Below, piece after piece: positions 3,890-63,990 of a stretch of 64,000 nt of DNA. The position numbers were made by a program, and so were the translations under genes. Each line of letters opens with the position of its first letter. Within the stretch, counting starts at the first letter, position 1. Under the pieces are notes generated by a model, which searched no databases, had not been told where the DNA came from, and saw nothing but the letters and a program-made list of their open reading frames with translations. This DNA is from Octopus sinensis (Eukaryota), in NCBI RefSeq assembly GCF_006345805.1, contig NC_043000.1, positions 152,396,001-152,460,000 on the forward strand, written 5' to 3'.

Positions 3890-6800
3890 TGTATGAGTGT
3901 TTTTGTGTACGTATGCAAATGTGCGTGTATGTGTGCACGCAACTGTGTGTGTGTGTGTGTGAGTGTGTGTGTGTGGATGAATGTGTTGTGAATTTGAGAG
4001 CGTATGTGTGTTTTTGTGTACGTATGCGAATGTGCGTGTATGTGTGCACGCAACTGTGTGTGTGTGTGTGTGTGTGGATGAATGTGTTGTGAATTTGGGA
4101 GCGTATGTGTGTTTTTGTGTACGTATGCAAATGTGCGTGTATGTGTGCACGCAACTGTGTGTGTGTGTGTGTGAGTGTGTGTGTGTGGATGAATGTGTTG
4201 TGAATTTGAGAGCGTATGTGTGTTTTTGTGTACATATGCGAATGTGTGTGTATGTGTGTGCGTAACTCTGTGTGTGTGTGTGTGTGTGTGGATGAATGTG
4301 TTGTGAATTTGAGAGCGTGTGTGTGTTTTTGTGTACGTATGCGAATGTGCGTGTATGTGTGCACGCAACTGTGTGTGTGTGTGTGTGTGAGTGTGTGTGT
4401 GTGGATGAATGTGTTGTGAATTTGAGAGCGTATGTGTGTTTTTGTGTACATATGCGAATGTGTGTGTATGTGTGTGCGTAACTCTGTGTGTGTGTGTGTG
4501 TGTGGATGAATGTGTTGTGAATTTGAGAGCGTGTGTGTGTTTTTGTGTACGTATGCGAATGTGCGTGTATGTGTGCACGCAACTGTGTGTGTGTGTGTGT
4601 GAGTGTGTGTGTGTGGATGAATGTGTTGTGAATTTGAGAGCGTATGTGTGTTTTTGTGTACATATGCGAATGTGTGTGTATGTGTGTGCGTAACTCTGTG
4701 TGTGTGTGTGTGTGTGTGTGTGGATGAATGTGTTGTGAATTTGAGAGCGTATGTGTGTTTTTGTGTACATATGCGAATGTGCGTGTATGTGTGCACGCAA
4801 CTGTGTGTGTGTGTGTGTGTGAGTGTGTGTGTGTGGATGAATGTGTTGTGAATTTGAGAGCGTGTGTGTGTTTTTGTGTACATATGCGAATGTGCGTGTA
4901 TGTGTGCACGCAACTGTGTGTGTGTGTGTGTGTGAGTGTATGTGTGTGGATGAATGTGTCGTGAATTTGAGAGCGTATGTGTGTTTTTGTGTACGTATGC
5001 GAATGTGCGTGTATGTGTGCACGCAACTGTGTGTGTGTGTTGAGTGTGTGTGTGGATGAATGTGTTGTGAATTTGAGAGCGTGTGTGTGTTTTTGTGTAC
5101 ATATGCGAATGTGCGTGTATGTGTGCACGCAACTGTGTGTGTGTGTGTGTGTGTGAGTGTGTGTGTGTGGATGAATGTGTTGTGAATTTGAGAGCGTATG
5201 TTGTTTTTTGTGTACGTATGCGAATGTGCGTGTATGTGTGCACGCAACTGTGTGTGTGTGTGTGTGTGTGTGAGTGTGTGTGTGTGGATGAATGTGTTGT
5301 GAATTTGAGAGCGTATGTGTGTTTTTGTGTACGTATGCGAATGTGAGTGTATGTGTGCACGCAACTGTGTGTGTGTGTGTGAGTGTGTGTGTGTGGATGA
5401 ATGTGTTGTGAATTTGAGAGCGTATGTGTGTTTTTGTGTACGTATGCGAATGTGCGTGTATGTGTGCACGCAACTGTGTGTGTGTGTGTGTGTGAGTGTG
5501 TGTGTATGAATATGTTGTGAATTTGAGAGCGTATGTGTGTTTTTGTTTACGTATGTGAATGTGTGTGTATGTGTGCACGCAACTGTGTGTGTGTGTGTGT
5601 GTGAGTGTGTGTGTGTGGATGAATGTGTTGTGAATTTGAGAGCGTATGTGTGTTTTTGTGTACATATGCGAATGTGTGTGTATGTGTGTGCGTAACTCTG
5701 TGTGTGTGTGTGTGTGTGTGGATGAATGTGTTGTGAATTTGAGAGCGTGTGTGTGTTTTTGTGTACGTATGCGAATGTGCGTGTATGTGTGCACGCAACT
5801 GTGTGTGTGTGTGTGTGAGTGTGTGTGTGTGGATGAATGTTGTGAATTTGAGAGCGTATGTGTGTTTTTGTGTACATATGCGAATGTGTGTGTATGTGTG
5901 TGCGTAACTGTGTGTGTGTGTGTGTGTGTGTGTGGATGAATGTGTTGTGAATTGAGAGCGTATGTGTGTTTTTGTGTACATATGCGAATGTGCGTGTATG
6001 TGTGCACGCAACTGTGTGTGTGTGTGTGTGTGAGTGTGTGTGTGTGGATGAATGTGTTGTGAATTTGAGAGCGTATGTGTGTTTTTGTGTACATATGCGA
6101 ATGTGCGTGTATGTGTGCACGCAACTGTGTGTGTGTGTGTGAGTGTGTGTGTGTGGATGAATGTGTTGTGAATTTGAGAGCGTATGTGTGTTTTTGTGTA
6201 CATATGCGAATGTGCGTGTATGTGTGCACGCAACTGTGTGTGTGTGAGTGTGTGTGTGTGGATGAATGTGTTGTGAATTTGAGAGCGTGTGTGTGTTTTT
6301 GTGTACATATGCGAATGTGCGTGTATGTGTGCACGCAACTGTGTGTGTGTGTTGTGTGTGAGTGTGTGTGTGTGGATGAATGTGTTGTGAATTTGAGAGC
6401 GTATGTGTGTTTTTGTGTACGTATGCGAATGTGCGTGTATGTGTGCACGCAACTGTGTGTGTGTGTGTGTGTGAGTGTGTGTGTGTGGATGAATGTGTTG
6501 TGAATTTGAGAGCGTGTGTGTGTTTTTGTGTACATATGCGAATGTGTGTGTATGTGTGCACGTAACTGTGTGTGTGTGTGTGTGTGTGTGGATGAATGTG
6601 TTGTGAATTTGAGAGCGTATGTGTGTTTTTGTGTACATATGCGAATGTGCGTGTATGTGTGCACGCAACTGTGTGTGTGTGTGTGTGAGTGTGTGTGTGT
6701 GGATGAATGTGTTGTGAATTTGAGAGCGTGTGTGTTTTTGTGTACATATGCGAATGTGCGTGTATGTGTGCACGCAACTGTGTGTGTGTGTGTGTGAGTG

Positions 6801-9741
6801 TGTGTGTGTGGATGAATGTGTTGTGAATTTGAGAGCGTATGTGTGTTTTTGTGTACATATGCGAATGTGCGTGTATGTGTGCATGCAACTGTGTGTGTGT
6901 GTGTGTGAGTGTGTGTGTGTGGATGAATGTGTTGTGAATTTGAGAGCGTATGTGTGTTTTTGTGTACATATGCGAATGTGCGTGTATGTGTGCATGCAAC
7001 TGTGTGTGTGTGTGTGTGAGTGTGTGTGTGGATGAATGTGTTGTGAATTTGAGAGCGTATGTGTGTTTTTGTGTACATATGCGAATGTGCGTGTATGTGT
7101 GCACGCAACTGTGTGTTGTGTGTGTGTGAGTGTGTGTGTGGATGAATGTGTTGTGAATTTGAGAGCGTATGTGTTTTTTTGTGTAGTATGCGATGTGCGT
7201 GTATGTGTGCACGCAACTGTGTGTGTGTGTGTGTGTGTGAGTGTGTGTGTGGATGAATGTGTTGTGAATTTGGGAGCGTATGTGTGTTTTTGTGTGTACA
7301 TATGCGAATGTGGTGTGTATGTGTGCACGTAACTGTGTGTGTGTGTGTTGTGTGTGGATGAATGTGTTGTGAATTTGAGAGCGTATGTGTGTTTTTGTGT
7401 ACGTATGCGAATGTGAGTGTATGTGTGCACGCAACTGTGTGTGTGTGTGTGAGTGTGTGTGTGTGGATGAATGTGTTGTGAATTTGAGAGCGTATGTGTG
7501 TTTTTGTGTACGTATGCGAATGTGCGTGTATGTGTGCACGCAACTGTGTGTGTGTGTGTGTGTGAGTGTGTGTGTATGAATGTGTTGTGAATTTGAGAGC
7601 GTATGTGTGTTTTTGTGTACATATGCGAATGTGCGTGTATGTGTGCACGCAACTGTGTGTCTGTGTGTGTGTGAGTGTGTGTGTGTGGATGAATGTGTTG
7701 TGAATTTGAGAGCGTGTGTGTGTTTTTGTGTACATATGCGAATGTGCGTGTATGTGTGCACGCAACTGTGTGTGTGTGTGTGTGTGAGTGTGTGTGTGTG
7801 GATGAATATGTTGTGAATTTGAGAGCGTATGTGTGTTTTTGTTTACGTATGTGAATGTGTGTGTATGTGTGCACGCAACTGTGTGTGTGTGTGTGTGTGA
7901 GTGTGTGTGTGTGGATGAATGTGTTGTGAATTTGAGAGCGTATGTGTGTTTTTGTGTACATATGCGAATGTGTGTGTATGTGTGTGCGTAACTCTGTGTG
8001 TGTGGTGTGTGTGTGGATGAATGTGTTGTGAATTTGAGAGCGTGTGTGTGTGTTTTTGTGTACGTATGCGAATGTGCGTGTATGTGTGCACGCAACTGTG
8101 TGTGTGTGTGTGTGAGTGTGTGTGTGTGGATGAATGTTGTGAATTTGAGAGCGTATGTGTGTGTTTTTGTGTACATATGCGAATGTGTGTGTATGTGTGT
8201 GCGTAACTCTGTGTGTTGTGGTGTGTGTGTGTGGATGAATGTGTTGTGAATTTGAGAGCGTATGTGGTTTTTTGTGTACATATGCGAATGTGCGTGTATG
8301 TGTGCACGCAACTGTGTGTGTGTGTGTGTGTGAGTGTGTGTGTGTGGATGAATGTGTTGTGAATTTGAGAGCGTATGTGTGTTTTTGTGTACATATGCGA
8401 ATGTGCGTGTATGTGTGCACGCAACTGTGTGTGTGTGTGTGGTGTGTGTGGTGTGTGGATGAATGTGTTGTGAATTTGAGAGCGTATGTGTGTTTTTGTG
8501 TACATATGCGAATGTGCGTGTATGTGTGCACGCAACTGTGTGTGTGTGAGTGTGTGTGTGTGGATGAATGTGTTGTGAATTTGAGAGCGTGTGTGTGTGT
8601 TTTTGTGTGTACATATGCGAATGTGCGTGTATGTGTGCACGCAACTGTGTGTGTGTGTGTGTTTGAGTGTGTGTGTGTGGATGAATGTGTTGTGAATTGA
8701 GAGCGTATGTGTGTTTTTGTGTACGTATGCGAATGTGCGTGTATGTGTGCACGCAACTGTGTGTGTGTGTGTGTGAGTGTGTGTGTGTGGATGAATGTGT
8801 TGTGAATTTGAGAGCGTGTGTGTGTTTTTGTGTACATATGCGAATGTGTGTGTATGTGTGCACGTAACTGTGTGTGTGTGTGTGTGTGTGGATGAATGTG
8901 TTGTGAATTTGAGAGCGTATGTGTGTTTTTGTGTACATATGCGAATGTGCGTGTATGTGTGCACGCAACTGTGTGTGTGTGTGTGTGAGTGTGTGTGTGT
9001 GGATGAATGTGTTGTGAATTTGAGAGCGTGTGTGTGTTTTTGTGTACATATGCGAATGTGCGTGTATGTGTGCACGCAACTGTGTGTGTGTGTGTGTGAG
9101 TGTGTGTGTGTGGATGAATGTGTTGTGAATTTGAGAGCGTATGTGTGTTTTTGTGTACATATGCGAATGTGCGTGTATGTGTGCATGCAACTGTGTGTGT
9201 GTGTGTGTGAGTGTGTGTGTGTGGATGAATGTGTTGTGAATTTGAGAGCGTATGTGTGTTTTTGTGTACATATGCGAATGTGCGTGTATGTGTGCATGCA
9301 ACTGTGTGTGTGTGTGTGTGAGTGTGTGTGTGTGGATGAATGTGTTGTGAATTTGAGAGCGTATGTGTGTTTTTGTGTACATATGCGAATGTGCGTGTAT
9401 GTGTGCACGCAACTGTTTGTGTGTGTGTGTGTGAGTGTGTGTGTGTGGATGAATGTGTTGTGAATTTGAGAGCGTATGTGTGTTTTTGTGTACATATGCG
9501 AATGTGCGTGTATGTGTTCACGCAACTGTGTGTGTGTGTGTGAGTGTGTTTGTATGAATGTGTTGTGAATTTGAGAGCGTATGTGTGTTTTTGTGTACAT
9601 ATGCGAATGTGCGTGTATGTGTGCACGCAACTGTGTGTGTGTGTGTGTGTGAGTGTGTGTGTGTGGATGCATGTGTTGTGAATTTGAGAGTGTATGTGTG
9701 TTTTTGTGTACATATGCGAATGTGTGTGTATGTGTGCACGC

Positions 9742-9772
<31 letters not shown>

Positions 9773-9960
9773 GATGAATGTGTTGTGAATTTGGGAGCGT
9801 ATGTGTGTTTTTGTGTACGTATGCGAATGTGCGTGTATGTGTGCACGCAACTGTGTGTGTGTGTGTGTGTGAGTGTGTGTGTGTGGATGAATGTGTTGTG
9901 AATTTGAGAGCGTATGTGTGTTTTTGTGTACATATGCGAATGTGCGTGTATGTGTGCGCG
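3890..9960. repeat. Tandem minisatellite/satellite, about 55 units of ~109 bp, derived from (TG)n
   Basis: Unit ggatgaatgtgttgtgaatttgagagcgtatgtgtgtttttgtgtacatatgcgaatgtgcgtgtatgtgtgcacgcaactg(tg)n-agtgtgtgtgtgt. 55 anchor occurrences counted by eye between about 3977 and 9887. Confidence 0.97.
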
Positions 9961-10338
9961 TAACTGTTTCTGTGTGCGTGTGTGTGCGCGCGTGTGTAAG
10001 CTCATGTGTGTGCTTGTATGTATATGAACGTGCGTGCGTATTTGTGCGCATATGTGTAAGTGCATGTATGAATGTGTATGCGTGTGTATGTGTGTATAAG
10101 TGTATGCATGGACGTGCATGTGTGTATGCATGTGTGTGTGTGTGTGTGTGTACATTTCTCTTGCTTCTTTATGTGAGTCAGCTATAATTGTACACGTCAT
10201 CTTGTGAAAGACATGGAAATCCATCTTTCGAGTAAAAAAATTAGTCAAAAGAAACCCTGAAATTTGAAGGGTGGAAGAAGGAAGTTTATCTATCAGTTTG
10301 TCTTCATCTCCCTGCAAGCTAGCTTCTAGCTACCTATC

Positions 10339-10564
10339 TATTTCTTTACTTACCCACAAGAGGCTAAAACACAGAAAGGACAAACAAAGACTGACAAATG
10401 GATTAAGTCGACTACATCGACCCAGTGTGTAACTGGTACTTAACTTATCGACCCCGAAAGGCAAAGTCGACCTCGGCGGAATTTGAACTCAGAACGTAAC
10501 GGCAGACGAAATACGGCTACGCATTTCGCCCGGCGTGCTAACGTTTCTGCCAGCTCGCCGCCTT
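10339..10564 (-). mobile_element. tRNA-derived SINE family B, monomer
   Basis: The - strand has head aaggcggcgagctggcagaaacgttagc (A-box-like), B box gagttcaaattcc, one body unit and a 3' end gtaaagaaata. Confidence 0.85.
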
Positions 10565-18720: not shown

Positions 18721-19415
18721 ATATGTACCAAAAACCAAAGATCTTTAAAAATAATGTCTTAAAGTTAGCATACTCGTAGTGATTTGGTGGTAAAGATGTA
18801 TTTGTATGCATAGGTGTAATTTGGAAAAGTAGTGATGGGGACATTATTTCCTTTAGTTCAGATAATAAGCTCCCCCACCAAAAAGTTAAAGAAAAAAATA
18901 GTGGTGTAATTAATAATCTTGTAGAGTTGATTCGAAACCTCAGCGGCTTGGTTATCGGTCAGACGACACGATAGAACATCTACAGTTTCACGTGATCGGT
19001 ATATTAATCGACCAATTAGTGTAAGGCTGTGGCATGGTATGGTTTTCTCGAACGTTCTAGAATTTCGCTTCCAGTTCCCTATAAAAACCGTTTGGCGTGC
19101 AGTTTAGGGAGTAGACGGCTAAAGGCAGACAACCAGGAACCTCTGTCACCAAAGAAATTTACGCGGCTGGCTTCGAATATTTTGAGGCCAACCATATATT
19201 GTTACACAGATAGCTTTCAATAATTTCAAAATAGTTTGTCTCTCTCTCAGTCGGAAAATTTTTGTCTGGCAATAAACAATTAAATATTTGCGAGTTGTTT
19301 CAGTTATCATTCACGCAGCCAACGAAATATCTCTTCATTGACCAGCTCAACTTGAACGACAGACAGGCGACAACCTCATTTTACTTTACCAGTGTGGTAT
19401 GGCTGTAAGCAAATA

Positions 19416-20175
19416 TATTTCTTTACTGCCCACCAGGGGCTAAACATAGAGGAGACAAACAAAGACAGACAAACGGATTAAGTCGATTACATCGACCCCG
19501 GTGCGTAACTGGTACTTAATTTATCGACCCCGAAAGGATGAAAGGCAAAGCCGACCTCGGCGGAATTTGAACTCGGAACGTAACGGCAGACGAAATACCA
19601 ATTTTTATTTCTTTACTACCCACAAGGGGTTAAACACAGAGGGGACAAACAAGGACAGACAAACGGATTAAGTCGATTACATCGACCCCAGTGTGTAACT
19701 TAATCTATCGACCCCGAAAGGATGAAAGGCAAAGTCGACCTCGGCGGAATTTGAACTCAGAACGTAACGGCAGACGAAATACCTATTTTTATTTCTTTAC
19801 TACCCACAAGGGGTTAAACACAGAGGGGACAAACAAGGACAGACACACGGATTAAGTCGATTACATCGACCCCAGTGTGTAACTGGTACTTACTTTATCG
19901 ACCCCGAAAGGATGAAAGCCAAAGTCGACCTCGGCGGAATTTGAACTCAGAACGTAGCGGCAGACGAAATACCTATTTCTATTTCTTTACTACCCACAAG
20001 GGGCTAAGCACAGAGGGGACAAACAAGGACAGACACACGGATTAAGTCGATTACATCGACCCCAGTGTGCAACTGGTACTTAATTTATCGACCCCGAAAG
20101 GATGAAAGCCAAAGTCGACCTCGGCGGAATTTAAACTCACAACGTAACGCAGACGAAATACCGCTAAGCATTTTC
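19416..20175 (-). mobile_element. SINE family B tetramer, 5'-truncated head, with 18-bp TSD
   Basis: Four ~185-bp body units. The direct repeat tatggctgtaagcaaata occurs at 19398-19415 and 20176-20193. Confidence 0.9.
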
Positions 20176-20649
20176 TATGGCTGTAAGCAAATAACTACTA
20201 CTTTTACTGCGGCTAGAACATACATATTAACACGTAAATAACAAAACAACACACATAAAAGACATACAGAGTTGAACAAAGAAAGCATGCTTAGACTTTC
20301 GCGCGGGAATTTATATGTATTTAGATTCATATCGGGGGTTTAACTGGAATGCATTCCAAGTACTCTGGTGTTTAGTCGGCAGTATAAACAACTAACAATG
20401 AAGCTAAATACTGGTATCAAATTTTTGGTGAAAGGCCAGCAAATTCGAGGGAGCGGGTAAGTCAGCTACATCAACCCCAGTGCTCATGTACTTTTTTATC
20501 GGCTTCGAAAAGATGAAAGGCAAAGTTGATCTTGGCGGAATTTGAGTTCAGAACGTAAAGACGGACGAAATGTTGCAAAGCGTTTTTGCCCAACCTTGTA
20601 ACGATTCTGCCAGTTTGCTGCATTAATGCTTGTTGCTAATATTTAGATA

Positions 20650-20681
<32 letters not shown>

Positions 20682-20804
20682 TATGTTTGACTTTTGCTTT
20701 ATGTTTGTACAAGTTGGCTCCAAGTCTCACCCAGAGACCTCAAGAGACAACAGGCTGGAAGTTCACGTTGTTGTTATGCCTAGTGTGCCATATATTATTA
20801 TTAT

Positions 20805-21370
20805 TATTATTGAGTGAGAGAGCAGTGCATGCCATCAAAGTGACACTGGGGTAAAATATACGAAGCCCAGTATACCCATCATGACTACCCGTCTGATAAG
20901 GGTACACAAAGCACATGCATCACAACCATATGCCTGCGACATGGTGATCTCATAACAAGATAAACAGCGTATGACCTTGCGGGTGGGGCCCAGTTAGAAT
21001 TTTCTTCTGGTTGGGTAACCCATCCCACTCAAAAGGTCCCTGATTAAGGGTTGTTTAAGGATGTTGAATGAAACACCCATGTTTCCAGAGGTGAATCATT
21101 CAAACTCCAAAGAATCCCTCTCAACACATGGCTATGATGCTCCCCGTCTACTTCTGCTCGTGATCAGAGATGGACATATCATCAGCCACTTAGGGACATG
21201 CTCAATTGGTTAAGGTCAAATAACTGGCAAGCAAATCTGTGGTATTGAGCAGAATATTTGCTGTAACCCATCTTTTATATGAAGACAAAACAATGTACAT
21301 GATAACACTTCCAGTCAGTTAAGATCAAAAGCCACGAGAACCACTGCCTGGTACTGCATCAGGGCATTTA
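20805..21370 (-). repeat. ~550-bp interspersed repeat ending in (AAT)n
   Basis: Reverse complement of 62530-63075; class not determined. Confidence 0.7.
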
Positions 21371-21611
21371 TTATTATTAGTTAAGGCGGTGAGATGGCAG
21401 ACTCAATACGTTGGACGAAATGTTTAGCGGTATTTCACTCGTCGCTACGTTCTGAGTTCGGATTCCGCCGAGTCGACTTTCCCTTTCATCCTTTCGGGAT
21501 CGATAAATTAAGTACCAGTGAAACACTGAGGTCGACTCATCCACTCCTCCTACATTTCAGGCCTTGTGCATTTAGTAGAAAGGATTATTATTATTATTAT
21601 TATTATTATTT

Positions 21612-22215
21612 AAGGTGGCGAGATAGCGCAGAGTAGTCAGCACGTTCGTCGAAATGCGTAGCCGTATTCCGTCTGCTGTTACGTTCTGAGTTCAAATTCC
21701 GCCGAGCTCGACTTTGCCTTTCATCCTTTCGGAGTCGATAAATTAAGTACCAGTTACGCACTGGGATCGATGTAATCGACTTAATCTGTCTGTCTGTTCT
21801 TGTTTGCCACTTCTGTGTTTAGTCCCTTGTAGGCAGTAAAGAAATAGGTATTTCGTCCATCGCTACATTCTGAGTTCAAATTCCGCCGAGGTCGACTTTG
21901 CCTTTCATCCTTTCGGAGTCGATAAATTAAGTACCAGTTACGCACTTGGATCGATGTAATCGACTTAATCCGTTTGTCTGTTCTTGTTTGTTCTCTCTGT
22001 GTTTAGCCCCTTGTGGGTAGTAAAGAAATAGGTATTTCGTCCATCGCTACGTTCTGAGTTCAAATTCCACTGAGGTCGACTTTGCCTTTCATTCTTTCGG
22101 GATCGATTAAATAAGTACCAGTTTAGTTCTGGAGACAATGTAATCGACTTAATCCCCTCCCCAAGCTGCCCTAGCGGCAAAGATTTGAAATCATTATTAT
22201 CATTATTATTATTAT
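21612..22215 (+). mobile_element. SINE family B trimer with a chimeric last unit
   Basis: Head, two bodies ending gtaaagaaatag, and a third body ending in the alternative tail cccctccccaagctg...gaaatc(att)n. Confidence 0.8.
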
Positions 22216-22524
22216 TTATATTTTCTCTTTATCATAGGTTTTGTTGGATCTCCTGGAGTCTTGCATCTGTAGCGATCTTACTACCTGCAGCCTACGGTAC
22301 CATGCTGTCCGTTCTTTTAAGATATCTAATACTTTCCTGATTATTCTGGCCGTGTCAAGGAGGCGAACTTTTTGTAACAGTTCTACTGGGCACTCTATTC
22401 CAATTTCCTTTATATTCCTTTTGATGTCTTCTGATACTGTTCCCAAGGACCAAACAATAATTGGCACTACCTTCACCTTCTTCATTTTCCATAGCCGGGT
22501 CATTTCGTACTCAAGAGGGTTCTC

Positions 22525-22596
<72 letters not shown>

Positions 22597-22626
22597 CCCA
22601 TCTATCTATCTATTTATCTACCCATC

Positions 22627-22657
<31 letters not shown>

Positions 22658-24038
22658 CTACCCATCTATCTATCTATTTATCTACCCATCTATCTATCTA
22701 TTTATCTACCCATCTATCTATCTATTTATCTATCTATCAACCTTTTGCCTTCCTTCTTGACTATTTGTTGGTCAAGGGGCATGCAACACAAGCAATATAG
22801 CATATGTGGTGCACCTTGTCCACCACCTCTAGGTCCAGTCTGTTATGCTCTAGCACCTGATCTGTTTGGATTCGGAAATCCCAGAGGATTTTGCGTGTCT
22901 CCAGCTTTTCCACTCTCTGCGGTTTGTACTCATACCGTGTCTTACCTCTCTCTACCCCCCACTTTTCGCACAATTTCCAATGTAGCACTTTCGCTACCTG
23001 GTCGTGTTGCCACAACTTGTAGTGGTTTTGGGCAAGTCTAGGGCATTTCTTCGTGATATGGGCAATAGTTTTATCCACTGTATTGCTGATACGGCACAGC
23101 AGAGACACTTGGTCATTCCTCAGGTTGATCTTCCGGTCCGTGGTCAGAGCTTGGTCCTGTGCTGCCAGTATACTGCTCTCGGTCTCTTTTTTTAGGGTTC
23201 TTTTCATCAGTCACCTAATTTTTCCATCAACTTCCGTTGTGACTACATGGAATTGATTGTGTAGACTCTTGTTGCGTAATTCTTCATGTCCTTTTTGTAC
23301 TTATTTCCTTTGTTTTCCTTTTTTTCTTTGTTCTCAATACTTCCTATTCCTAACTGTCATTAGCAAGGTTTCCTTACTTTAAGCTAGGTATCTCATTAAA
23401 CTTTCGAGTTCGATAGGCACAGTCTTCAACACTTACCAGTCCTCTTCCTCTGTTTGCTCTCTTCATGTATAGGCGAACAGTGTCTGCACGTGGATGATGG
23501 GCTCCAAGCATCGTTAGGAGCCTTCTTGACTTTCTGTCCGTCTCCTTTAGCTCATTGTCTGTCCTCTTAAGGATTCCAGCGCCATGCCGAACTACTGCGA
23601 CTGCGCGCGAGTTTATTGCCGAAATTATGTTTCTGGCACTCAGCTTTGAAGCCAATATTTTTCTCGCTCGCCGCAGGTACTCTTCTTTTGTCTTTTCTTT
23701 CTTGTCGTGGTGTTTAATTCCATCTGCCTCAAGTATTCCCAGGTATTTATAGCTGGATTGAGGTTGAATTACCTTCATCATTTCACCACTTGGCAACCAT
23801 ATGCCTTCTGTCCTGGCAAGCTTTCCTCGTCTCATCACCATGGTAACACATTTTGAGAGTCCAAACTCCATCTTAATATCATTGGAGAAAATCCGCACAG
23901 ACTGGGCTAGGCAGTCCAGTTCTACCTCAGTTTTTGTGAATAGCTTCAGGTCGTTCATGAATAGCAAATGGTTTAGTTTTCACTTAACTCTTCCCAGATC
24001 ATACCCCAACTTTGTTTTCTGTAGTATTTCACTCAAGG

Positions 24039-24045
<7 letters not shown>
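22216..24045 (-). pseudogene. 5'-truncated R4/Dong-like non-LTR retrotransposon (RT C-terminus, zinc knuckle, RLE)
   Basis: NHLLFMNDLKL (YMDD-type motif), YKYLG, LYMKR..GRGL, ILAAQDQAL, HDQVAKVLHW, ILWDFRIQTD and [24 protein letters not shown]. Interrupted by a (CTAT)n tract. Confidence 0.9.
22525..22738. repeat. (CTAT)n microsatellite inside the LINE
   Basis: Direct reading of the tetranucleotide tract. Confidence 0.95.
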
Positions 24046-24078
<33 letters not shown>

Positions 24079-24169
24079 TCTCGGTTTCTCGCTTACACAT
24101 CAATAATAATTATGAATGCTAAAGAAACAGCAACATATGTCAATGTGCATATTTCAAACGCCTTAAACT

Positions 24170-25400
24170 TCTCTTGAAATCAAAACTCAACTCAAGGAAC
24201 CTTGTGACTGCCATCAACATATGGGCGGTTGCTGTAGTCCACTATAGCCCACCCATCCTGAAATGGACACAAGCGGAGATTAACCAATTTGATCGTGCTA
24301 CCCGAAAGACAATGATAATGTATGGTGCCCTCCACCCTAAGGTGAATGTACAAAGGCTCTACATGAAGAGGGATAAAGGTGGACGTGGGCTGATTAGCGT
24401 ACGAGAGTGCATCAACATGGCAGAATATTTGGAAAACAGTAAACAAGACCTGCTACAAGTATTCTGCTAATGCAGAAAGATTTAACAAAAGTGTACTTGA
24501 GAGTGCTCATGAATTTAGATCCAGAACAGCCAACGAGAGAGAAGAAACCCTGCTCTTGATGAAATTACATGGTCAGTTCCACCGTGACACCAACAAATTA
24601 AAAAACCAGGAAGCATCATGGAAGTAGCTTAACAAGGGTGGCCTAAAAAAGAATACTAAAAGCCTAATCATCGCTGCCCAGGACCAAGTATTGAGTACCA
24701 ACTCAGTGAAAAAGAATATATACTGCACAAGGGCAACGGACCTCTGCAGAATGTGTGGGAAGAGGATCGAAAGCGTGACTCACATTGTTAGTGCTTGTGA
24801 AAGTCTTATGCAGAAAGAGTACAGGTGTAGACACGACAAAGTAGCCCAAAACCTCCACTGGCTAATATGCCATACATATAGATATGAGGTTACGGGTGCT
24901 TGGTACCAATATACACCGGAAAAGGCAATGGACGAAAAGGGGAAGGTAAAAATCCTCTGGGACTTTGACTTCCAGACAGATGAGGTATTAGAGCACCGAA
25001 GGCCGATACAGTGACCTTTAGGAGGGATAAACAAGAGTGCCTAATAATTGATATGACAGTGCCAAGGGATCAACATATCATCATGAAAGAAAGAGAAAAA
25101 GTTGGTAAATATGGAGACCTGAGAATTGAGATCGCTAAGATGTGGCAGCTACGAGAGTCAAACATGAAGGTTATTCCTATTGTCATCGGAGCATTGAGTT
25201 CAACACCACCCAATCAGAAAAAAGACATCTGAAAACTTTAGAAATACCCTACAATCTTGGTGTATTGCAAAAGTCGGCATTACTTGGAACTGCACGTATA
25301 TTGCGTAAAGTGCTATCTCTCTGGGGTCCTTGCTGTAACTTGACAAACTGTACAACCTCCCGCTAGATACAATATCTTAAATCAAAAATAACATTCACAA
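24170..25400 (+). pseudogene. Second 5'-truncated R4/Dong-like retrotransposon
   Basis: LNSRNLVTAINIWAVAVVHYS, LYMKRDKGGRGL, AAQDQ, CRMCGKRIESVTHIVSAC, RHDKVA, ILWDFDFQTD and LQKSALLGTARILRKVL. Confidence 0.9.
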
Positions 25401-26448
25401 CACCATACTGTAACAAGGGCGTTCTCAGAATATTTTAATCTGAAATGTTTGTTTAAAAGTTGATCTTGTTATTTCAACGTCAACTCAAGGAAATTCTGCC
25501 AACATAGATTTTTATCTTGTACTTTTAGTATTTTGGTCACCTTAAGGATCATATCCGGTGGATATCAATGTAATTATTCCTTTTTGGTGCCACCCATACA
25601 CACAGAGGCACACGTTCACAGGCACACGCACACACACGATTGGCAGCACTCATAGCATACAGAAATAGGCATGCGAACAGAAAAGTGGAAGATTAGCGAT
25701 GCTGGCAGACTGTATAAGGAAGACTGAAAAACTGAGTCGTGTAAGTGGTTTATGCGGAAGAAAGAGTAATTTAAGTGTTTTAAGTGTGTACAATCGTGCT
25801 TAAACCTACTCTAACTGATTATGAAATTATCTGATAAGAGAAAGGACATTGACAGTTGTACAATGTCAAACACAACTAAGAAAGCTTGTACGTAAAATAT
25901 AGAAAAAAAATAAGAACTCCCCGCCTCATAAAAAAAAAAAAAAATTGAAATTAAATATAGTGTAACAGCCACTGCACAATCCAACCAGAAGGTTAGCGAA
26001 TGTACGTAATAATAACTTAACAGTAAAGAGATGTATTTCAGCATGTTGAATTATATCAAGCAATAAAATTGAGATACGAGTCAACCATAGAGTCAGCATT
26101 GTTTATTAATTTGTTTTACAGCGGCCCATGGACTTTCCACTTGTTACATGTGGGTACCATTTGTGTGTGTGTGTGTGGGGGGCGTGTGTATGTGTGTGTG
26201 TGTGGGGGGGCGTGTGTATGTGTGTGCGTGCACACACACACGCACGCTCTCACAAATACACACCAGAAAGTATAGTACCTTTGCATGACAATGAACTGGA
26301 TTGCACATTTTATATGTCCTGAAAATAATCATATTGAAAAACTTACGGTAGGTTCGAATATTTATGCCTTTAGTCTTAATACATAAACTCATAATTACAG
26401 ATATACAGAGATGGGAAACTATATTTTTTAATTCCCATTCATAATATA

Positions 26449-27959
26449 TATTTCTTTACTACCCACAAGGGGCTAAACATAGAAGGAACAAACAAGGACA
26501 GACAAACGGATTAAGTCGATTACATCGAGCCCAGGGCGTAACTGGTACTTAATTTATCGACCCCGAAAGGATGAAAGGCAAAGTCGACCTCGGTGGAATT
26601 TGAACTCAGAACGTAGCGGCAGACGAAATACCTATTTCTTTACCACCCACAAGGGGCTAAACACAGAGGGGACAAACAAGGATAGACAAACGGATTAAGT
26701 CGATTACATCGAGCCCAGGGCGTAACTGGTACTTAATTTATCGACCCCGAAAGGATGAAAGGCAAAGTCGACCTCGGTGGAATTTGAACTCAGAACGTAG
26801 CGGCAGACGAAAATACCTATTTCTTTACCACCCACAAAGGGCTAACTAAACACGAGGGGACAAACAAGGATAGACAACGGATTAAGTCGATTACATCGAG
26901 CCCAGGGCGAACTGGTACTTAATTTATCGACCCGAAAGGATGAAAGGCAAAGTCGACCTCGGTGGAATTTGAACTCAGAACGTAGCGGCAGACGAAATAC
27001 CTATTTCTTTACCACCCACAAGGGGCTAAACACAGAGGAGACAAACAAGGATAGACAAACGGATTAAGTCGATTACATCGAGCCCAGGGCGTAACTGGTA
27101 CTTAATTTATCGACCCCGAAAGGATGAAAAGCAAAGTCGACCTCGGTGGAATTTGAACTCAGAACGTAGCGGCAGACGAAATACCTATTTCTTTACCACC
27201 CACAAGGGGCTAAACACAGAGGGGACAAACAAGGATAGACAAACGGATTAAGTCGATTACATCGACCCCAGTGCGTAACTGGTACTTAATTTATCGACCC
27301 CGAAAGGATGAAAAGCAAAGTCGACCTCGGTGGAATTTGAACTCAGAACGTAGCGGCAGACGAAAATACCTATTTCTTTACCACCCACAAGGGGAAAACA
27401 CAGAGGGGACAAACAAGGATAGACAAACGGATTAAGTCGATTACATCGAGCCAGGTAACTGGTACTTAATTTATCGACCCCGAAAGATGAAAGGCAAAGT
27501 CGACCTCGGTGGAATTTGAACTCAGAACGTAGCGGCAGACGAAATACCTATTCTTTACCACCACAGGGGCTAAACACAGAGGAGACAAACAAGGATAGAC
27601 AAACGGATTAAGTCGATTACATCGAGCCCAGGGCGTAACTGGTACTTAATTTATCGACCCCGAAAGGATGAAAAGCAAAGTCGACCTCGGTGGAATTTGA
27701 ACTCAGAACGTAGCGGCAGACGAAATACCTATTCTTTACCACCCACAAGGGGTAAACACAGAGGGGACAACAAGGATAGACAAACGGATTAAGTCGATTA
27801 CATCGACCCCAGTGCGTAACTGGTACTTAATTTATCGACCCCGAAAGGATGAAAGGCAAAGTCGACCTCGGTGGAATTTGAACTCAGAACGTAACGGCAG
27901 ACAAAATATGGCTACGCATTTCGCCCGGCGTGCTAACGGTTCTGCCAGCTCGCCGCCTT
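26449..27959 (-). mobile_element. SINE family B octamer (one head plus eight ~183-bp bodies) with 17-bp TSD
   Basis: Eight units counted. ttcccattcataatata occurs at 26432-26448 and 27960-27976. A single head lies at about 27900-27959. Confidence 0.92.
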
Positions 27960-28578
27960 TTCCCATTCATAATATAAACTACGATAACATGAATAGTGGG
28001 GATCTCAGCAAAAGAACTGACTATCGGAAAGATATAACAGATTCCATAGTTCTTATATATTGTAACCGTCTCCCTTAATGGCCATTTTTTAAAAAACATT
28101 GTGCACAACCATTAAATGCTTTAATTGGAAGAAAATGAGGCAAGTTCATATTTGATGCAATTGACATGAATCAAAGCCACTTTTCTTCTTCAAAAACACC
28201 CTACAAACATGGAAGAATACTGGAATTGACATAATTTGTTGATTCCACGCTGGACTACACTTATAATTTGGAGAAATGCTTTTACTGCTATGTATGTAGA
28301 AAGTAACTTCATAAAGTGTATGAAAGAGAAAAAACAAGGCAGTGAATTAGAATTAGTTTTATACAGTTGAAATTTTCAATTGTAAAATATACTGAAAACC
28401 ACATCTGATAAAAAAAAATATATTAAAATTAGTATTTGAAGCATTTCTACACAGTGTGGATTTTAGTAATTGCTTTCTTGTTGTAAAACTTGCATACTCC
28501 AAACCAAATAGTAAGCAGCTTTCTTTATTAAAGTGTAAATATGCAACACACAACTGATATTCTGGTATAAGCGATATT

Positions 28579-46134: not shown

Positions 46135-46357
46135 TATTTCTTCACTGCCCACTAGGGGCTAAACACAGAGGGGACAAACAAGGACAGACAAATGGATTAA
46201 GTCAATTACATCGACCCCAGTGCGTAACTGGTACTTAATTTATCGACCCCGAAAGGATGAAAAGCAAAGTCGACCTCGGCGGAATTTGAACTCGGAACGT
46301 AATGGCAGACGAAATACGGCTACACATTTCGCCCGGCGTGCTAACGTTTCTGCCAGC
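46135..46357 (-). mobile_element. SINE family B monomer
   Basis: One body plus a partial head; 3' end gaagaaata. Confidence 0.85.
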
Positions 46358-47427
46358 TTCATACTTATTCTTATGACTGTGTAGATACTTGACACCTGTG
46401 CTGCATGCATCATTTCATGACTCATTATATGGCCTGCATAATACCTTAATTATATATGCCTGATAAAATTTTACCAATCTTTTCCTAACATAATCCTGAG
46501 GTCTGACTCCATTTATTTGAATTATCAACCAATGACAACATGCTGCATATGATATTCATTAAAGATATTTCCTAGTGGTGTAGTCAGTTTCTGATTATTA
46601 ATATCTCTTATCATCTGCTATAAGACGAAAAAGATTGTTCATGTATGCACCTATCATAAAATTGACGAGTATTTTGTCAGCCCGCAGTACTGCACCCAAC
46701 TTTTTGCTGCAGATTTGGTGCTTTATTTTCAGAAGATGAGGTTAAGTGGATGTTGGTTTAGCAGTAACTCAACTTTATAAAATGCATTTGAGTCAACGAA
46801 TGTACGAGATCGCTGAAAATGGCAGCAACAGCAAGTGAAAGCTTACTCTATTGTTAAAAAGAAATATAGGAATGACACTTTGGATAATGTAATTCTAGAT
46901 GTACTTATATTGAAATAAAACTAATTAATCAGAACTGACCTGGGTATAAACAACAATAATACAACAGAATACAATAATAAGCACAACAGGTTGTGTGGGT
47001 AGATCAGGCTTCAAGAGGTTAGGTAAACAACGAATAATGTGATAGATGAGTAGATGTTGAGATGCTGGCTGAAGGGTTGGTAATTTCATACAGGGACAAC
47101 TGGAATAGTATTGTAACAATGACATTGACACAAAGTTACACTTTTTTCTTAGCAGTATTTTCGGTACAAATGAAGTGGAGTGAAATGTCTTCAGTTTAGA
47201 ATTGAACTGGCTTTACTGTGCCTAAGTATAGCAGCATGAAGTGATAAATGAATCTGGTCTTTAATATACAAGGTGATAAATTGTAGACAGATTTCAGTTT
47301 TATAAGACCTCATCAGGAATGCATAGTAGTTATTCTAAGGTCTGATGAGTACATGCTAGACTATATTTCAGACAAAGTGGCAGCTAAACAACACTGCAGC
47401 GAAAACTAATGTATTTCATTAATAGTA

Positions 47428-49008: not shown

Positions 49009-49444
49009 AGGGCATTGAGCTGGCAGAATTGTTAGCACGCTGGGCGAAATGCATAGCTGTATTTCATTTGCCGTTACGTTCTGAGTTCAAATTCCGCCAA
49101 GGTCAACTTTGCCTTTCATCCTTTCGGGGTCGATAAATTAAGTACCAGTTACGCACTGGAGTCAATATAATCGACTTAATCCCTTTGTCTGTCCTTGTTT
49201 GTTTCCTCTATGTTTAGCCCCTTGTGGGCAATAAAGAAATAAGAATCGTTAGCACACTGGGCAAAATGCTTAGCGTTTTTACGTTCTGAGTTCAAATTCC
49301 GTCGAGGTCGACTTTGCCTTTCATCCTTTTGGGGTCAATTAAATAAGTACCAGCTACACACTGGGGCCGATGTAATGAACTTAATCCCTTTGTCTGTCCT
49401 TGTTTGTCCCCTCTATGTTTATCCCTGGTGGGCAATAAAGAAAT
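49009..49444 (+). mobile_element. SINE family B dimer
   Basis: Head plus body ending aaagaaata, then re-entry at agaatcgttagc within the head and a second body. Confidence 0.8.
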
Positions 49445-54974: not shown

Positions 54975-55916
54975 TTATTCCCTTTTAACAGCTTTTTCAC
55001 TAACTTCCCATAGTCTTTTCGCTCCATCCTCATTTAGTCCATTGCTATTAAGGTCTTCTTGGCTGCAATTTGAATAGTAGTAACCAGATTCATTTTGTAA
55101 CTTTTCAGACAGAATACAATACAAAGTTGTCTGTGCTCCTTGTGCAGGAGTTTTCAAAAATAATCTGGAAATGCAATCAAAATATCTTAAAAATTGTGGC
55201 ACTGTGTGACGCATAATATCTGTGAGAACAATTCCTGGATTAACACAATAGACATTAACCCCACTGCCTTCTAATCTCTTGGATAATTCACGACAAAACC
55301 AGAGATTTGCAAGTTTGCTAGATTTGTAAGCTTCAGTGCCATTATAACTGTCCCTCCAGTTAATATCATCAAAGTTTATCCGAGCGTCTTTGTACATGAA
55401 ACTGGACAGTACTACAATTCTTGATGGAGCAGACTTTTTTAGCAAATCCAGAAGCAATGTTGTTAATAGAAAATGTCCCAAGTGGTTCACTTGAAAATGT
55501 GTTTCGAATCCATCTTCTGTATATAATGAAGGACAACGATAAACTCCAGCATTATTGACTAAAATATCTAAATGTGGTTCCTCCTCATTTATCCTTGCAC
55601 AAAATTTACGGACAGACTCGAATGAAGACAGATCTAATTCACGTACGACAACCTCATTTTTACCAGAATCTTTTGTAGCATCACGTATTTCTTTTGCGGC
55701 TGCTTCAGCCTTTTCTAGATTTCTACAAGCCATAATCACCCTGGCATTCCTTTTTGCACACTCTAAAGCAGTCTGTTTTCCAAGTCCTGTATTTGCTCCA
55801 GTAACAATTACAGTTTTACCATCCAAATATTCAGAACATTGGTGCTTTATAAAGCGAGAGCAGAAGTTATTACTTGACTGGTGAGTCCCAGTAGCACCAG
55901 GAACACAGGTACACAT
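54975..55916 (-). CDS. Retinol dehydrogenase 11/12/13/14-like short-chain dehydrogenase/reductase
   Basis: Uninterrupted 313-aa frame from ATG 55916 with TGANTGLG, LDL, NNAG, NHLGHFLLT, VLSS and YKSSK motifs. A strong acceptor (ttttcttttattttgcag|) at 55926/55925 means the true start may lie in an upstream exon. AATAAA overlaps the stop codon. Confidence 0.95.
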   Translation of the reverse strand: MCTCVPGATGTHQSSNNFCSRFIKHQCSEYLDGKTVIVTGANTGLGKQTALECAKRNARVIMACRNLEKAEAAAKEIRDATKDSGKNEVVVRELDLSSFESVRKFCARINEEEPHLDILVNNAGVYRCPSLYTEDGFETHFQVNHLGHFLLTTLLLDLLKKSAPSRIVVLSSFMYKDARINFDDINWRDSYNGTEAYKSSKLANLWFCRELSKRLEGSGVNVYCVNPGIVLTDIMRHTVPQFLRYFDCISRLFLKTPAQGAQTTLYCILSEKLQNESGYYYSNCSQEDLNSNGLNEDGAKRLWEVSEKAVKRE

Positions 55917-56699
55917 TTCAGTTGGCTGCAAAATAAAAGAAAAAACGGAAATTAGAAAGATTCTATCAATAACTGTGTTTGGATTATTCTAGAAGAATTA
56001 GTGACAGTCAACTGACTGAAAGCACAATAGTTTGTATCAAGTTGCTGCTGTCACAGTACCGTGTCCCTCTGTCAAGATACTTAACACTCACAACTTCACC
56101 CCACATATTTATAAAGCCAACGATGGAGCATGTGTACTAGAAATAATAGCCAAATTACCCTCAAATTGCACTTTACCCTCTTGGACACATTAATCAATGG
56201 GTTGATCCTTGAATTCACTATCAGTGAAAAGACAGTTATGATTGGAATATCTTTCATGACAGACTTACTTGATAAGAACTGATCTCGGGCCTAACAACAA
56301 TAACTTATGCAATACCGTAAATATCTCACTCATATCTTGAGGTCCAGCTATTGATTCTGGTTTATACTGTAGGCATCAGGGATCTGTGGTTAAGAAACTC
56401 GCTTTCCAAACATATGATCTTGGGTTCAGTTCTAATGCATGGCACCTTGGGTATGTCTTCAACTACAGTTCCAGGTCAACCAAAGTATTATGAGTGGATT
56501 CGGTAAACAGAAACAGAAAGAAGCCTGTCAAATCTGTGTGTGTGTTTGTGTGTGTGTGACAATATATGGAGTCAAGTAATCCAGCAGTGCTTGTAAAAAA
56601 GTTCCTTAATGTCCCCTTCTACAAAACATATACAATATATAGCACAATACAAGTGAAAATGATAAGAAGTGTATAAAGTCATAAATGACACATATATTC

Positions 56700-58959: not shown

Positions 58960-59386
58960 CTATGACTGGCACCCGGCAGATGCCAGGACCCCTGGACTGG
59001 AGATACGTAAAAAGCACTATCCGAATCGTGGCCAATGCCAGCATCGCCTCGCCTGGCTTCCGTGTCGGTGGAACGTAAAAGGCACCATCCGAATCGTGGC
59101 CGATGCCAGTGCCACCTCGACTGGCTTCCGTGCAGGTGGTACGTAAAATGCACCAATCCGACCATGGCCGATGCCAGCCTCGCCTGGCACCTGTGCAGGT
59201 GGCATGTAAAAAGCACCCACTACACTCATGGAGTGGTTGGTGTTAGGAAGGGCATCCAGCTGTAGAAACATTGCCAGATAAGACCGGAGCCTGGTGCAGC
59301 CTCCTGGCTTCCCAGATCCCCGGTCGAACCGTCCAACCCATGCTAGCATGGAGAACGGACGTTGAACGATGATGATGATGATGATG
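58960..59386 (+). mobile_element. RTE-type 3'UTR repeat (truncated LINE or SINE) with internal tandem subrepeats and (GAT)n tail
   Basis: Repeated ggcttccgtg..ggtggcacgtaaaa..cacc units. The 3' end is shared with 17053-17300. Confidence 0.75.
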
Positions 59387-59946: not shown

Positions 59947-60440
59947 CTAGCAGTATCGCCCGGCGTTGCTCGGGTTTGTAAGGGAAATAACTACAAAGCA
60001 TTTTTAGAGAGTTATAGCCAAAAAATAGCAAAAAAATGCATTATAAATGGGAAAAAAATGATGGTAAATTTTTTTTAAATCGTTGACTCATCGTAGACAT
60101 TTTTAGAGAGTTATAGCCAAAAAATAGCAAAAAAATGCATTATAAATGGGAAAAAAATGATGGTAAATTTTTTTTAAATCGTTGACTCATCGTAGACATT
60201 TTTAGAGAGTTACTTCCCTTATATAATAGCGAAAAAATGCATTAAAATGGAAAAAAATGATGGTAAATTTTTTTTTAAATTGTAGACTCATCATAGACGC
60301 GCGCTAATACCAGAAGGGCTCGATATGTATCATGACTATAAGATACCCGGTTTTGGTTAAACTGCACCGCAAAATGTGGGAGTAGTTAGGAATCTAAATC
60401 GTAGGAGACAGACACACAACTTGACTTTTATATATAAAGA
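59947..60440 (-). mobile_element. Non-autonomous Helitron (same type as 35763-36161) with an internal tandem duplication
   Basis: On the - strand A|TCTTTATATATAAAAG...CTAG|T. A block of about 100 bp is duplicated at 60000-60210. Confidence 0.85.
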
Positions 60441-63634: not shown

Positions 63635-63990
63635 CATCATCATCATCATCATCGTTTAACGTCCATTCTCCATGCTAGCATGGGTTGGACGGTTCGACCG
63701 GGGATCTGGGAAGCCAGAAGGAGGCACCAGGCTCCGGTCTTACCTGGCAATGTTTCTACAGCTGGATGTCCTTCCTAATGCCAACCACTCTGTGAGTGTA
63801 GTGGGTGCTTTTTACGTGCCACCTGCACTGGTGCCAGGCAAGGCTGGCATTGGCCACGGTCGGATTGGTGTATTTTACGTGCCACCTGCACGGAAGCCAG
63901 TCGAGGCGGCACTGGCTTCGGCCACGATTCAGATGGTGCATTATACGTGCCACCGACACGGAAGCCAGTTGAGGCGCCACAATTCGGATA
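63635..63990 (-). mobile_element. RTE-type 3'UTR repeat, inverted relative to 58960-59386
   Basis: (CAT)n followed by cgtttaacgtccattctccatgctagcatgggttggacgg and the same subrepeats. Confidence 0.75.

What the first reader, a model, noticed from the sequence alone, without database searches (positions are those of the whole stretch)
26432..27976. A SINE inserted as a head plus 8-body concatemer inside one 17-bp target-site duplication
Seen: one tRNA-like head followed by eight ~183-bp bodies (B box kept, A box lost), all bracketed by ttcccattcataatata. The same family occurs here as monomers (10339, 46135), a dimer (49009), a trimer (21612) and a tetramer (19416). Established: long TSDs mark target-primed reverse transcription. 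Inference: the family may be mobilised as, or converted during integration into, multimers through repeated template jumping or a circular/pseudo-circular RNA. This resembles retrozyme multimers but there is no ribozyme in the unit. Units 4-5 resemble units 7-8, so some post-insertion unequal crossover is also likely.
Basis: partly seen in the sequence, partly recalled or inferred. Interest (0 to 1): 0.8.

Follow-up and report, generated by a model that had tools for sequence, protein, structure and literature searches.

The report
SINE with tandemly repeated body
A short retrotransposon (SINE) sits here as one head followed by eight copies of its 184-bp body inside one insertion scar; thousands of similar arrays exist in this genome, so it is a member of a recently described kind of SINE-derived tandem array, not a new mechanism.

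Summary
Window 26449-27959 (minus strand) holds a 50-nt head and eight 178-185-bp body units, flanked by an exact 17-bp duplication found nowhere else in the window.

The junction between units joins the SINE's 3' terminus (GTAAAGAAATA) to position 49 of the element (GGTATTTCG). The same junction occurs 14,555 times in this 2.72-Gb genome. Dimers, trimers, a tetramer and a pentamer at other loci each carry their own 10-18-bp duplication. In many of these arrays the units are more diverged from each other than from units elsewhere. The element therefore arrived with at least two units.

The extra units look locally made:
- u2-u7 are chimeras of the terminal type (5' part) and the first-unit type (3' part).
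- They are up to 99% alike, against 96% or less to anything else in the genome.
- A variant pair they carry exists only 7 times genome-wide, 4 of them here.
- Array sizes are heavy-tailed, and long arrays are the most uniform.

That pattern fits in-register unequal exchange. One genome cannot show whether the exchange happened in DNA after insertion or during reverse transcription.

No ribozyme and no tRNA match were found. Copying of a monomeric or circular RNA is contradicted. Similar arrays are already published for bivalves and squamates.

The parts
26432..26448 (.). Target-site duplication, copy next to the element's 3' end
   Evidence: Exact 17-mer, present only at 26432 and 27960 in the window.
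27960..27976 (.). Target-site duplication, copy next to the element's 5' end
   Evidence: One paralogous repeat copy at G000:C20:4342163-4342416 matches both flanks about 60-85 bp apart, so it looks like an empty site. This rests on coordinates only.
27910..27959 (-). SINE head (element positions 1-50) with an A-box-like motif, of the GTAGCC head subtype
   Evidence: Aligns at 93-95% to heads at 40 or more other loci. No tRNA call from ARAGORN or Rfam.
27729..27909 (-). Unit 1, next to the head: T at site 17, A98/G104, A134, TGG tail
   Evidence: Alignment of the eight units. Carries a TTTT run at its start.
26632..27728 (-). Units 2-7, the internal units. Each is a chimera: the 5' part is of the terminal-unit type (C17, and c98/c104 in five of the six) and the 3' part is of the unit-1 type (A134, TGG tail). 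Boundaries: 27548-27728, 27370-27547, 27185-27369, 27001-27184, 26817-27000, 26632-26816.
   Evidence: one clade together with unit 1. Up to 99% identical to each other against 96% or less to any other scored copy in the genome.
26449..26631 (-). Unit 8, the terminal unit: C17, c98/c104, G134, TAG tail ending GTAAAGAAATA at the duplication
   Evidence: In the tree it groups with monomer and terminal-type units, not with units 1-7.
19398..20193 (-). Second array of the family: four units, head 5'-truncated at position 39, 190-bp period, including its 18-bp duplication (19398-19415 and 20176-20193)
21612..22215 (+). Third array: head plus two units plus a third unit with the tail of the related older family, between (ATT)n tracts
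46135..46358 (-). Monomer, 5'-truncated by 9 nt, with an 11-bp duplication at 46127 and 46364
49017..49444 (+). Two copies joined by the second junction type (tail AAATAAGAA to head position about 17)
10339..10564 (-). Monomer with no recognisable duplication

Best explanation
This is a non-autonomous, polymerase-III-type SINE of a lineage whose 185-nt body (element positions 49-233) is repeated head to tail.

Origin of the junction (inferred). The junction joins the SINE's 3' terminus directly to position 49 of a TAGCGG-subtype copy. It was probably made once or a few times by an end-to-end template jump of the LINE reverse transcriptase.

Mobilisation (shown). Multi-unit elements have since been transcribed and inserted as units, each insertion making a single target-site duplication. 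The element at 26449-27959 arrived with at least two different units, a first-unit type and a terminal type.

Growth of this array (pattern shown, timing inferred). It reached eight units by in-register exchange between misaligned units, which is why units 2-7 are terminal-type on the 5' side and first-unit-type on the 3' side. I judge that this exchange most likely happened in DNA after insertion, by unequal crossing-over or replication slippage, in several steps.
For: The junction is inherited, not made at this locus:
- The same 26-mer occurs 14,555 times genome-wide, with 0 for the control.
- The 'GG' at the junction equals positions 49-50 of the TAGCGG head subtype, which has 11,130 copies.
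- This locus's own flank (TATATT...) could not have supplied that junction.

Multi-unit insertions:
- Recognisable duplications flank 9 of 11 dimers, 1 of 2 trimers, and the one tetramer, pentamer and octamer examined.
- In L003, L006, L020, L022, L025 and L029 the units of one array differ by 7-12%, yet each is 3-7% from units at other loci.
- L003 2747-3160 is head + 2 units + 17 nt of a third unit + a T-run, inside a 12-bp duplication.

Two unit types in the template:
- Site 16 is C in 14% of GTAGCC-type head-adjacent units, against 42-44% of junction loci.
- TGG tails are never terminal: 0 of 31 terminal loci against 10 of 36 internal loci.

Local growth of the array:
- Chimeric internal units with at least two crossover intervals.
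- Units 1-7 form one clade and unit 8 lies elsewhere.
- 99% identity within the array against 96% or less to foreign copies.
- The c98/c104 28-mer exists 7 times in the genome, 4 of them here and 3 as singletons.
- 17 of 19 multi-junction arrays are uniform at site 16, against 7.7 expected from independent draws.
- Array sizes are heavy-tailed (minimum units 2: 52 loci; 3: 9; 4: 2; 5: 3; 7: 2; 8: 1), and the long arrays have every junction exact.
- This copy has seven TTTT runs on its sense strand while the family reference has none.
Against: - No orthologous or allelic locus could be examined, so post-insertion growth is inferred, not seen.
- Every sequence pattern in the octamer could equally come from in-register template switching on a two-unit RNA during one integration.
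- The shared C-to-T change that creates TTTT in three units lies at a site that also varies at other loci. Single-base indels in this assembly look like consensus noise: L029 and L030 differ by 1 mismatch and 6 gaps over 3.3 kb.
- No source or sister copy of this element was found.
- The partner LINE was not identified.
- A test of whether first-unit and second-unit lineages co-vary across loci was inconclusive (r=0.2, p=0.14). Recurrent formation of dimers is therefore not excluded.
Confidence: 0.55

Rival explanations
1. The template was the same multi-unit RNA, but the extra units were added during this one integration. The reverse transcriptase repeatedly switched in register from the first unit back to the second unit of a two-unit RNA (slippage retrotransposition of whole units), so the element was eight units long from the start.
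For: - The chimeric structure of units 2-7, with different switch points, is exactly what such switching gives.
- The family is highly mosaic, including units that are B-type on the 5' side and carry the other family's tail on the 3' side. That suggests a recombination-prone reverse transcriptase.
- The duplication is a perfect 17 of 17.
- No intermediate or sister array was found.
Against: - A constant chance of switching per cycle predicts a geometric size distribution. The observed one has an excess at 5-8 units, and uniformity rises with array length.
- Subsets of units share variants absent from both parental types, and the array shows a three-unit periodicity, which points to several steps.
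- The TTTT runs now present in several units would have stopped a polymerase III transcript if they had been in the template.
Confidence: 0.25
2. One reading: monomeric SINE RNAs, or one circular RNA, are concatenated at each integration by repeated end-to-end template jumps from position about 49 to an RNA 3' end.
For: - Both junction classes show 4-5 nt of microhomology between the upstream tail's last bases and the acceptor site. Tail ...ATAGGTAT joins at GGTATTTCG, and tail ...ATAAGAA joins at head position 17, CAGAAAC.
- Arrays combine units of different subtypes and even of another family.
Against: - Internal units of one array are not independent draws from a pool: 17 of 19 arrays are uniform at site 16 against 7.7 expected.
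- They are not re-copies of one monomer either. Unit 1 has T at site 16 in 13 of 14 arrays whose second unit has C, and the terminal unit differs from the internal ones.
- Some copies run 17-36 nt into a further unit at their 3' end.
- No ribozyme or other known self-cleaving motif is present, and the unit RNA folds no better than shuffled sequence (z = +0.67).
Confidence: 0.08
3. A monomer was inserted and all eight units arose afterwards in place.
For: The duplication brackets the whole array, and the units are similar to each other.
Against: - A first duplication in place could not create a junction that starts exactly at the SINE's 3' terminus and is identical to 14,555 junctions elsewhere.
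- Units 1 and 8 differ at markers that recur across the family.
Confidence: 0.02
4. The unit number here is an assembly artefact of a noisy long-read assembly.
For: Many single-base indels occur in the units. Near-identical duplicates L029 and L030 differ mostly by indels.
Against: - The units carry distinct substitution patterns in a consistent order.
- Arrays with a minimum of 7-8 units occur at three other places in the first 30 Mb of contig C1.
Confidence: 0.05

Closest known systems
TSD1-(SINE)n-TSD1 tandem-like SINE structures in the blood clam Scapharca broughtonii (Mob DNA 2024, PMC11481361)
   Same: One duplication around the whole array. The first element has a complete head, the internal elements are truncated in the head, and the last has a complete tail.
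   Different: In the clam the first and internal elements are also truncated in the tail. Here every unit runs to the SINE's very 3' terminus. The clam paper suggests unequal recombination but does not show that arrays are re-mobilised.
SINE-derived satellites of squamate reptiles (Vassetzky et al., Mob DNA 2023, PMC10702118)
   Same: Tandem repeats made of part of a SINE, with a longer terminal unit reaching the SINE terminus. Units are 150-180 bp, di- or trimeric periodicity occurs, and uniformity rises with array length.
   Different: Those arrays reach up to 1000 units and favour subtelomeres. Here the arrays seen have 2 to about 10 units, are dispersed, and each has its own target-site duplication.
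Complex (dimeric or oligomeric) SINEs that amplify as such, for example Alu, quasi-dimeric B1 and CHRS 'quasioligomers', and tandem Dip/B1 multimers in jerboas (SINEBase paper PMC3531059; PMC10702118 discussion)
   Same: A duplicated SINE module becomes part of the transcribed, retrotransposed unit.
   Different: In those families the unit number is fixed or the repeat is short (about 20-30 nt). Here a 185-nt body varies from 1 to 8 or more copies between loci.
Retrozymes and hammerhead-bearing tandem retroelements
   Same: Tandem non-coding units of roughly 180 bp.
   Different: No self-cleaving ribozyme motif here. Arrays start with a polymerase-III-type head and end with a distinct terminal unit.

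Membership tests
SINE (non-autonomous non-LTR retrotransposon) | Dispersed, high copy number and short | tested here: met
   About 11,000 exact head/body boundaries for each of two head subtypes, spread over all large contigs. The monomer is about 233 bp.
SINE (non-autonomous non-LTR retrotransposon) | Variable-length target-site duplications and 5' truncation (target-primed reverse transcription) | tested here: met
   10-18-bp duplications of unrelated sequence at many loci, and copies truncated at positions 9, 16 and 39.
SINE (non-autonomous non-LTR retrotransposon) | Head derived from tRNA, 5S or 7SL RNA with internal polymerase III boxes | tested here: inconclusive
   A-box-like and B-box-like motifs are present, judged by eye. 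No tRNA call from ARAGORN or Rfam.
SINE (non-autonomous non-LTR retrotransposon) | 3' tail shared with a partner LINE | tested here: inconclusive
   In about 360 kb every tail match was attached to a SINE body, so no LINE 3' end was found.
Tandem-like SINE array within one duplication (bivalve type) | Complete head only in the first unit, complete tail in the last, one duplication around all | tested here: met
SINE-derived satellite | Tandem units made of part of a SINE, with an extended terminal unit | tested here: met
SINE-derived satellite | Long, homogenised arrays in heterochromatic or subtelomeric regions | not tested
   Only arrays up to about 10 units were seen. Chromosomal position was not analysed.
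Retrozyme or ribozyme-bearing tandem retroelement | Self-cleaving ribozyme in each unit | tested here: not met
   No ribozyme family at E<=10 on either strand of 26300-28100.
Retrozyme or ribozyme-bearing tandem retroelement | Circular RNA intermediates | not testable with these tools
   No RNA data are available.

The most novel reading that the evidence does not exclude
Whole 185-nt units are gained during target-primed reverse transcription itself, by in-register or end-to-end template switching guided by the 4-5 nt that the SINE's 3' end shares with position 49. If so, the LINE machinery would directly seed satellite-like arrays across an octopus-like genome, at a scale of more than 14,000 junctions.
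Probability: 0.25. Interest if true: 0.65.

Novelty: new member of a known kind. Interest (0 to 1): 0.38.

Why it matters
The family gives a large, datable series running from monomers through dimers to arrays of eight and about ten units. There are about 14,500 junctions in one genome. This makes it a good system for watching interspersed repeats turn into tandem repeats. It could also be used to measure how much unit gain comes from reverse transcription and how much from DNA recombination. For annotation, such arrays will be split or miscounted by standard repeat masking, and this inflates SINE copy numbers.

Tried and rejected
- tRNA and ribozyme searches gave only microsatellite-driven miRNA noise.
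- The RNA fold of a unit is no more stable than shuffles.
As a result the three singleton loci carrying the octamer's variant pair, and the paralogous empty site on C20, could not be read.
- A Mantel test for co-inheritance of first- and second-unit lineages was inconclusive.
- The crossover points of units carrying the other family's tail could not be resolved, because there are too few diagnostic sites.
- No LINE sharing the tail was found.
- No array that starts in the middle of a unit and has a duplication turned up in the sample. Such an array would have proved insertion as a multimer of three or more units.
- Exact sequence fragments of the element are not in the searchable literature, and no octopus paper found mentions such arrays.
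- I first took site 16 for a purely positional marker. The genome-wide counts show it partly reflects descent of the repeated unit from the TAGCGG head subtype.

Full report
**What is there.**
On the minus strand of window 26449-27959 lies an element of 1,511 bp. It has a 50-nt head followed by eight units of 178-185 bp. Tandem Repeats Finder gives period 184, 8.0 copies and 95% matches. The exact 17-mer TTCCCATTCATAATATA abuts both ends and occurs nowhere else in the window.

Each unit keeps the 13-mer GAGTTCAAATTCC, which is B-box-like. Each unit starts at about element position 49-51, so the A-box-like part of the head is present only once.

Neither ARAGORN nor Rfam recognises a tRNA in this or other copies, and no ribozyme family matches even at E<=10. 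'tRNA-like' is therefore a motif-level description only.

The genome (G000) has 2.72 Gb in 13,516 contigs. Its size and its microsatellite- and SINE-rich composition suggest an octopus to me, but I did not verify that.

**The family.**
A monomer is about 233 bp: head 1-50, then a body ending ...CTTGTGGGTAGTAAAGAAATA.

A related, older family shares positions 1-168 but has a different tail that ends in (ATT)n.

In the window the family occurs in several forms:
- Monomers at 10339 and 46135.
- A four-unit array at 19416-20173, with the head truncated at position 39 and an 18-bp duplication.
- A three-unit array at 21612 whose last unit carries the older family's tail.
- A pair at 49017 joined by a second junction type, tail AAATAAGAA to head position 17.

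**The junction.**
All canonical junctions read ...GTAAAGAAATA|GGTATTTCGTC.... The exact 26-mer occurs 14,555 times in the genome, and the reversed control occurs 0 times.

The 'GG' is not filler. It equals positions 49-50 of the TAGCGG head subtype, which has 11,130 exact copies. That is as common as the GTAGCC subtype to which this octamer's head belongs, with 11,048 copies.

The repeated unit is therefore positions 49-233. The junction is the SINE's very 3' terminus joined to an internal site, with no duplication in between. DNA-level duplication of a monomer at this locus could not create that junction, because the local flank reads TATATT. An end-to-end template jump of a reverse transcriptase would create it (inference).

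The tail subtype predicts what follows it:
- TAG and TGG tails, which run on as AGGTAT, are followed by the position-49 junction.
- CAA tails, which run on as AAGAA, are followed by the position-17 junction.

In both classes 4-5 nt are shared between the tail end and the acceptor site.

**Multi-unit elements are inserted as such.**
- Among elements with a complete tail, recognisable duplications flank 6 of 15 monomers, 9 of 11 dimers, 1 of 2 trimers, and the one tetramer, pentamer and octamer.
- In many arrays the units are 7-12% apart while each is 3-7% from units at other loci: L003, L006, L020, L022, L025 and the trimer L029. These units are not duplicates made in place.
- L003 2747-3160 is head + two units + 17 nt of a third unit + a T-run, inside a 12-bp duplication. 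That is the expected copy of a polymerase-III-terminated multi-unit transcript.
- Terminal 3' ends often run 2-7 nt into what would be the next unit (AGG, AGGTAT).
- In the first 25 Mb of contig C1, arrays follow 12 of 66 TAGCGG heads but only 2 of 82 GTAGCC heads (p=0.0014). Array formation therefore goes with lineage.

**How common the arrays are.**
In 200 kb of random sequence plus the window there are about 12 monomers and 5 canonical arrays.

In the first 30 Mb of C1, 69 loci hold at least one exact junction. Their minimum unit numbers are 2 (52 loci), 3 (9), 4 (2), 5 (3), 7 (2) and 8 (1). An octamer is thus unusual but not unique.

The distribution has a heavier tail than a geometric one. 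The three longest arrays have every junction exact, whereas in five-unit arrays about half the junctions are exact.

**The octamer itself.**
The units carry these markers (numbering of the alignment, where site 17 is unit site 16 elsewhere):

| Unit(s) | Site 17 | Sites 98/104 | Site 134 | Tail |
|---|---|---|---|---|
| 1 | T | A/G | A | TGG |
| 8 | C | C/C | G | TAG |
| 2, 3, 5, 6, 7 | C | C/C | A | TGG |
| 4 | C | A/G | A | TGG |

Each internal unit is therefore terminal-type on the 5' side and first-unit-type on the 3' side. There are at least two different crossover intervals. Misalignment of a two-unit element produces exactly this pattern.

Further points:
- In a tree of 99 units, units 1-7 form one clade and unit 8 groups with monomer and terminal-type units.
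- Across the data set, terminal versus internal position clusters on the tree: 19 changes against a shuffled mean of 26.4 and minimum of 20. Locus also clusters: 47 against a mean of 61 and minimum of 58.
- An internal unit is 99% identical to three sister units but at most 96% to any other scored copy in the genome.
- The C98/C104 pair, searched as an exact 28-mer, exists 7 times in 2.72 Gb. Four are in this array and three are singletons.
- The A134 variant is a dispersed lineage marker with 505 copies, nearly all single.

So no sister or master array was found, and the extra units are private to this locus.

**Which mechanisms are excluded.**
- Independent draws from an RNA pool are rejected. 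Of 19 arrays with two or more exact junctions, 17 are uniform at site 16, against 7.7 expected.
- Re-copying of one monomeric or circular RNA is rejected. Unit 1 has T in 13 of 14 arrays whose second unit has C. TGG tails are internal in 10 of 36 loci and terminal in 0 of 31. The terminal unit differs from the internal ones.
- Growth from a monomer in place is rejected by the junction argument above.

**What remains open.**
In-register exchange can happen in DNA after insertion or by template switching on a two-unit RNA during integration. I favour DNA for four reasons:
- The size distribution is heavy-tailed.
- Uniformity rises with array length, as reported for squamate SINE-derived satellites.
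- The array shows a three-unit periodicity of shared variants.
- This copy has seven TTTT runs on its sense strand, while the family reference has none.

None of these is decisive. Some of the variants lie at sites prone to recurrent change or to consensus errors. L029 and L030, which are near-identical duplicates, differ by 1 mismatch and 6 gaps.

**Comparison with what is known.**
- The architecture 'one duplication, complete head first, head-truncated units inside, complete tail last' was described in 2024 for the clam Scapharca broughtonii.
- Tandem repeats made of SINE parts were described in 2023 for squamates.
- Oligomeric SINEs that amplify as such are long known.
- I found no report of such arrays for octopus SINEs.

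The points that are particular here:
- Units run to the exact 3' terminus.
- There are two microhomology-linked junction classes.
- Some arrays carry another family's tail.
- There is direct evidence that arrays are re-mobilised.
- The scale is about 14,500 junctions.

**Verdict.**
The feature is real and correctly observed. The finding is a new member of a known kind and of moderate interest.

Noticed in passing
window 19416-27959: Three multi-unit arrays lie within 8.5 kb. They differ in subtype, orientation and duplication (four units at 190-bp period; three units with the other family's tail; eight units). Elsewhere the density is roughly one array per 100-440 kb. The clustering is unexplained.
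   Followed up: partly
L019 1310-1761, L032 1664-2309, L045 4270-4672: Three independent arrays end about 36 nt into a further unit, at the B-box-like motif GAGTTCAAATT, with no recognisable duplication. L045 also lacks a head and starts exactly at a unit boundary.
   Followed up: partly
L003 2747-3160: This copy ends with 17 nt of a third unit followed by a T-run, inside the 12-bp duplication TTGTGATTGGAA. It looks like reverse transcription primed at the oligo-U end of a polymerase III transcript rather than at the canonical tail.
   Followed up: yes
G000:C2:189048597-189050594: Eight exact hits of a body 29-mer are spaced about 218 bp apart, with a few double gaps. This suggests an array of ten or more units with a 218-bp period, as expected for the tail-to-head-position-17 junction type.
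   Followed up: no
L046 6533-7404: Four head-bearing copies of the older related SINE family lie in tandem, about 230 bp apart.
   Followed up: no
window 3891-9997: A G+T-rich satellite of 111-113-bp units, about 55 copies at 90% matches, ends about 340 bp before the SINE monomer at 10339. It creates artefactual open frames of up to 1,859 codons.
   Followed up: no
window 54975-55931 (-): An uninterrupted 318-codon frame encodes a short-chain dehydrogenase/reductase (Pfam adh_short, E=4.6e-36). It is the only clear protein-coding signal I saw in the window.
   Followed up: partly
L029 and L030 (G000:C13:14976250-14983434): Two 3.3-kb segments 3.9 kb apart are 99.1% identical (1 mismatch, 6 gaps). 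Each holds the same three-unit array with the same duplication. This is either a recent segmental duplication or an assembly duplicate. It also shows that small indels in this assembly are mostly noise.
   Followed up: partly
window 27960-28260 and 26380-26448: Both flanks of the octamer belong to an older interspersed repeat (67-88% matches at dozens of loci). One copy, at C20:4342163-4342416, matches both flanks close together, like an empty site.
   Followed up: partly
window 59005-59217, 59999-60298, 63844-63980: Further tandem repeats are present: 68-bp units at two places 4.6 kb apart, and 99-bp units. They were not examined.
   Followed up: no
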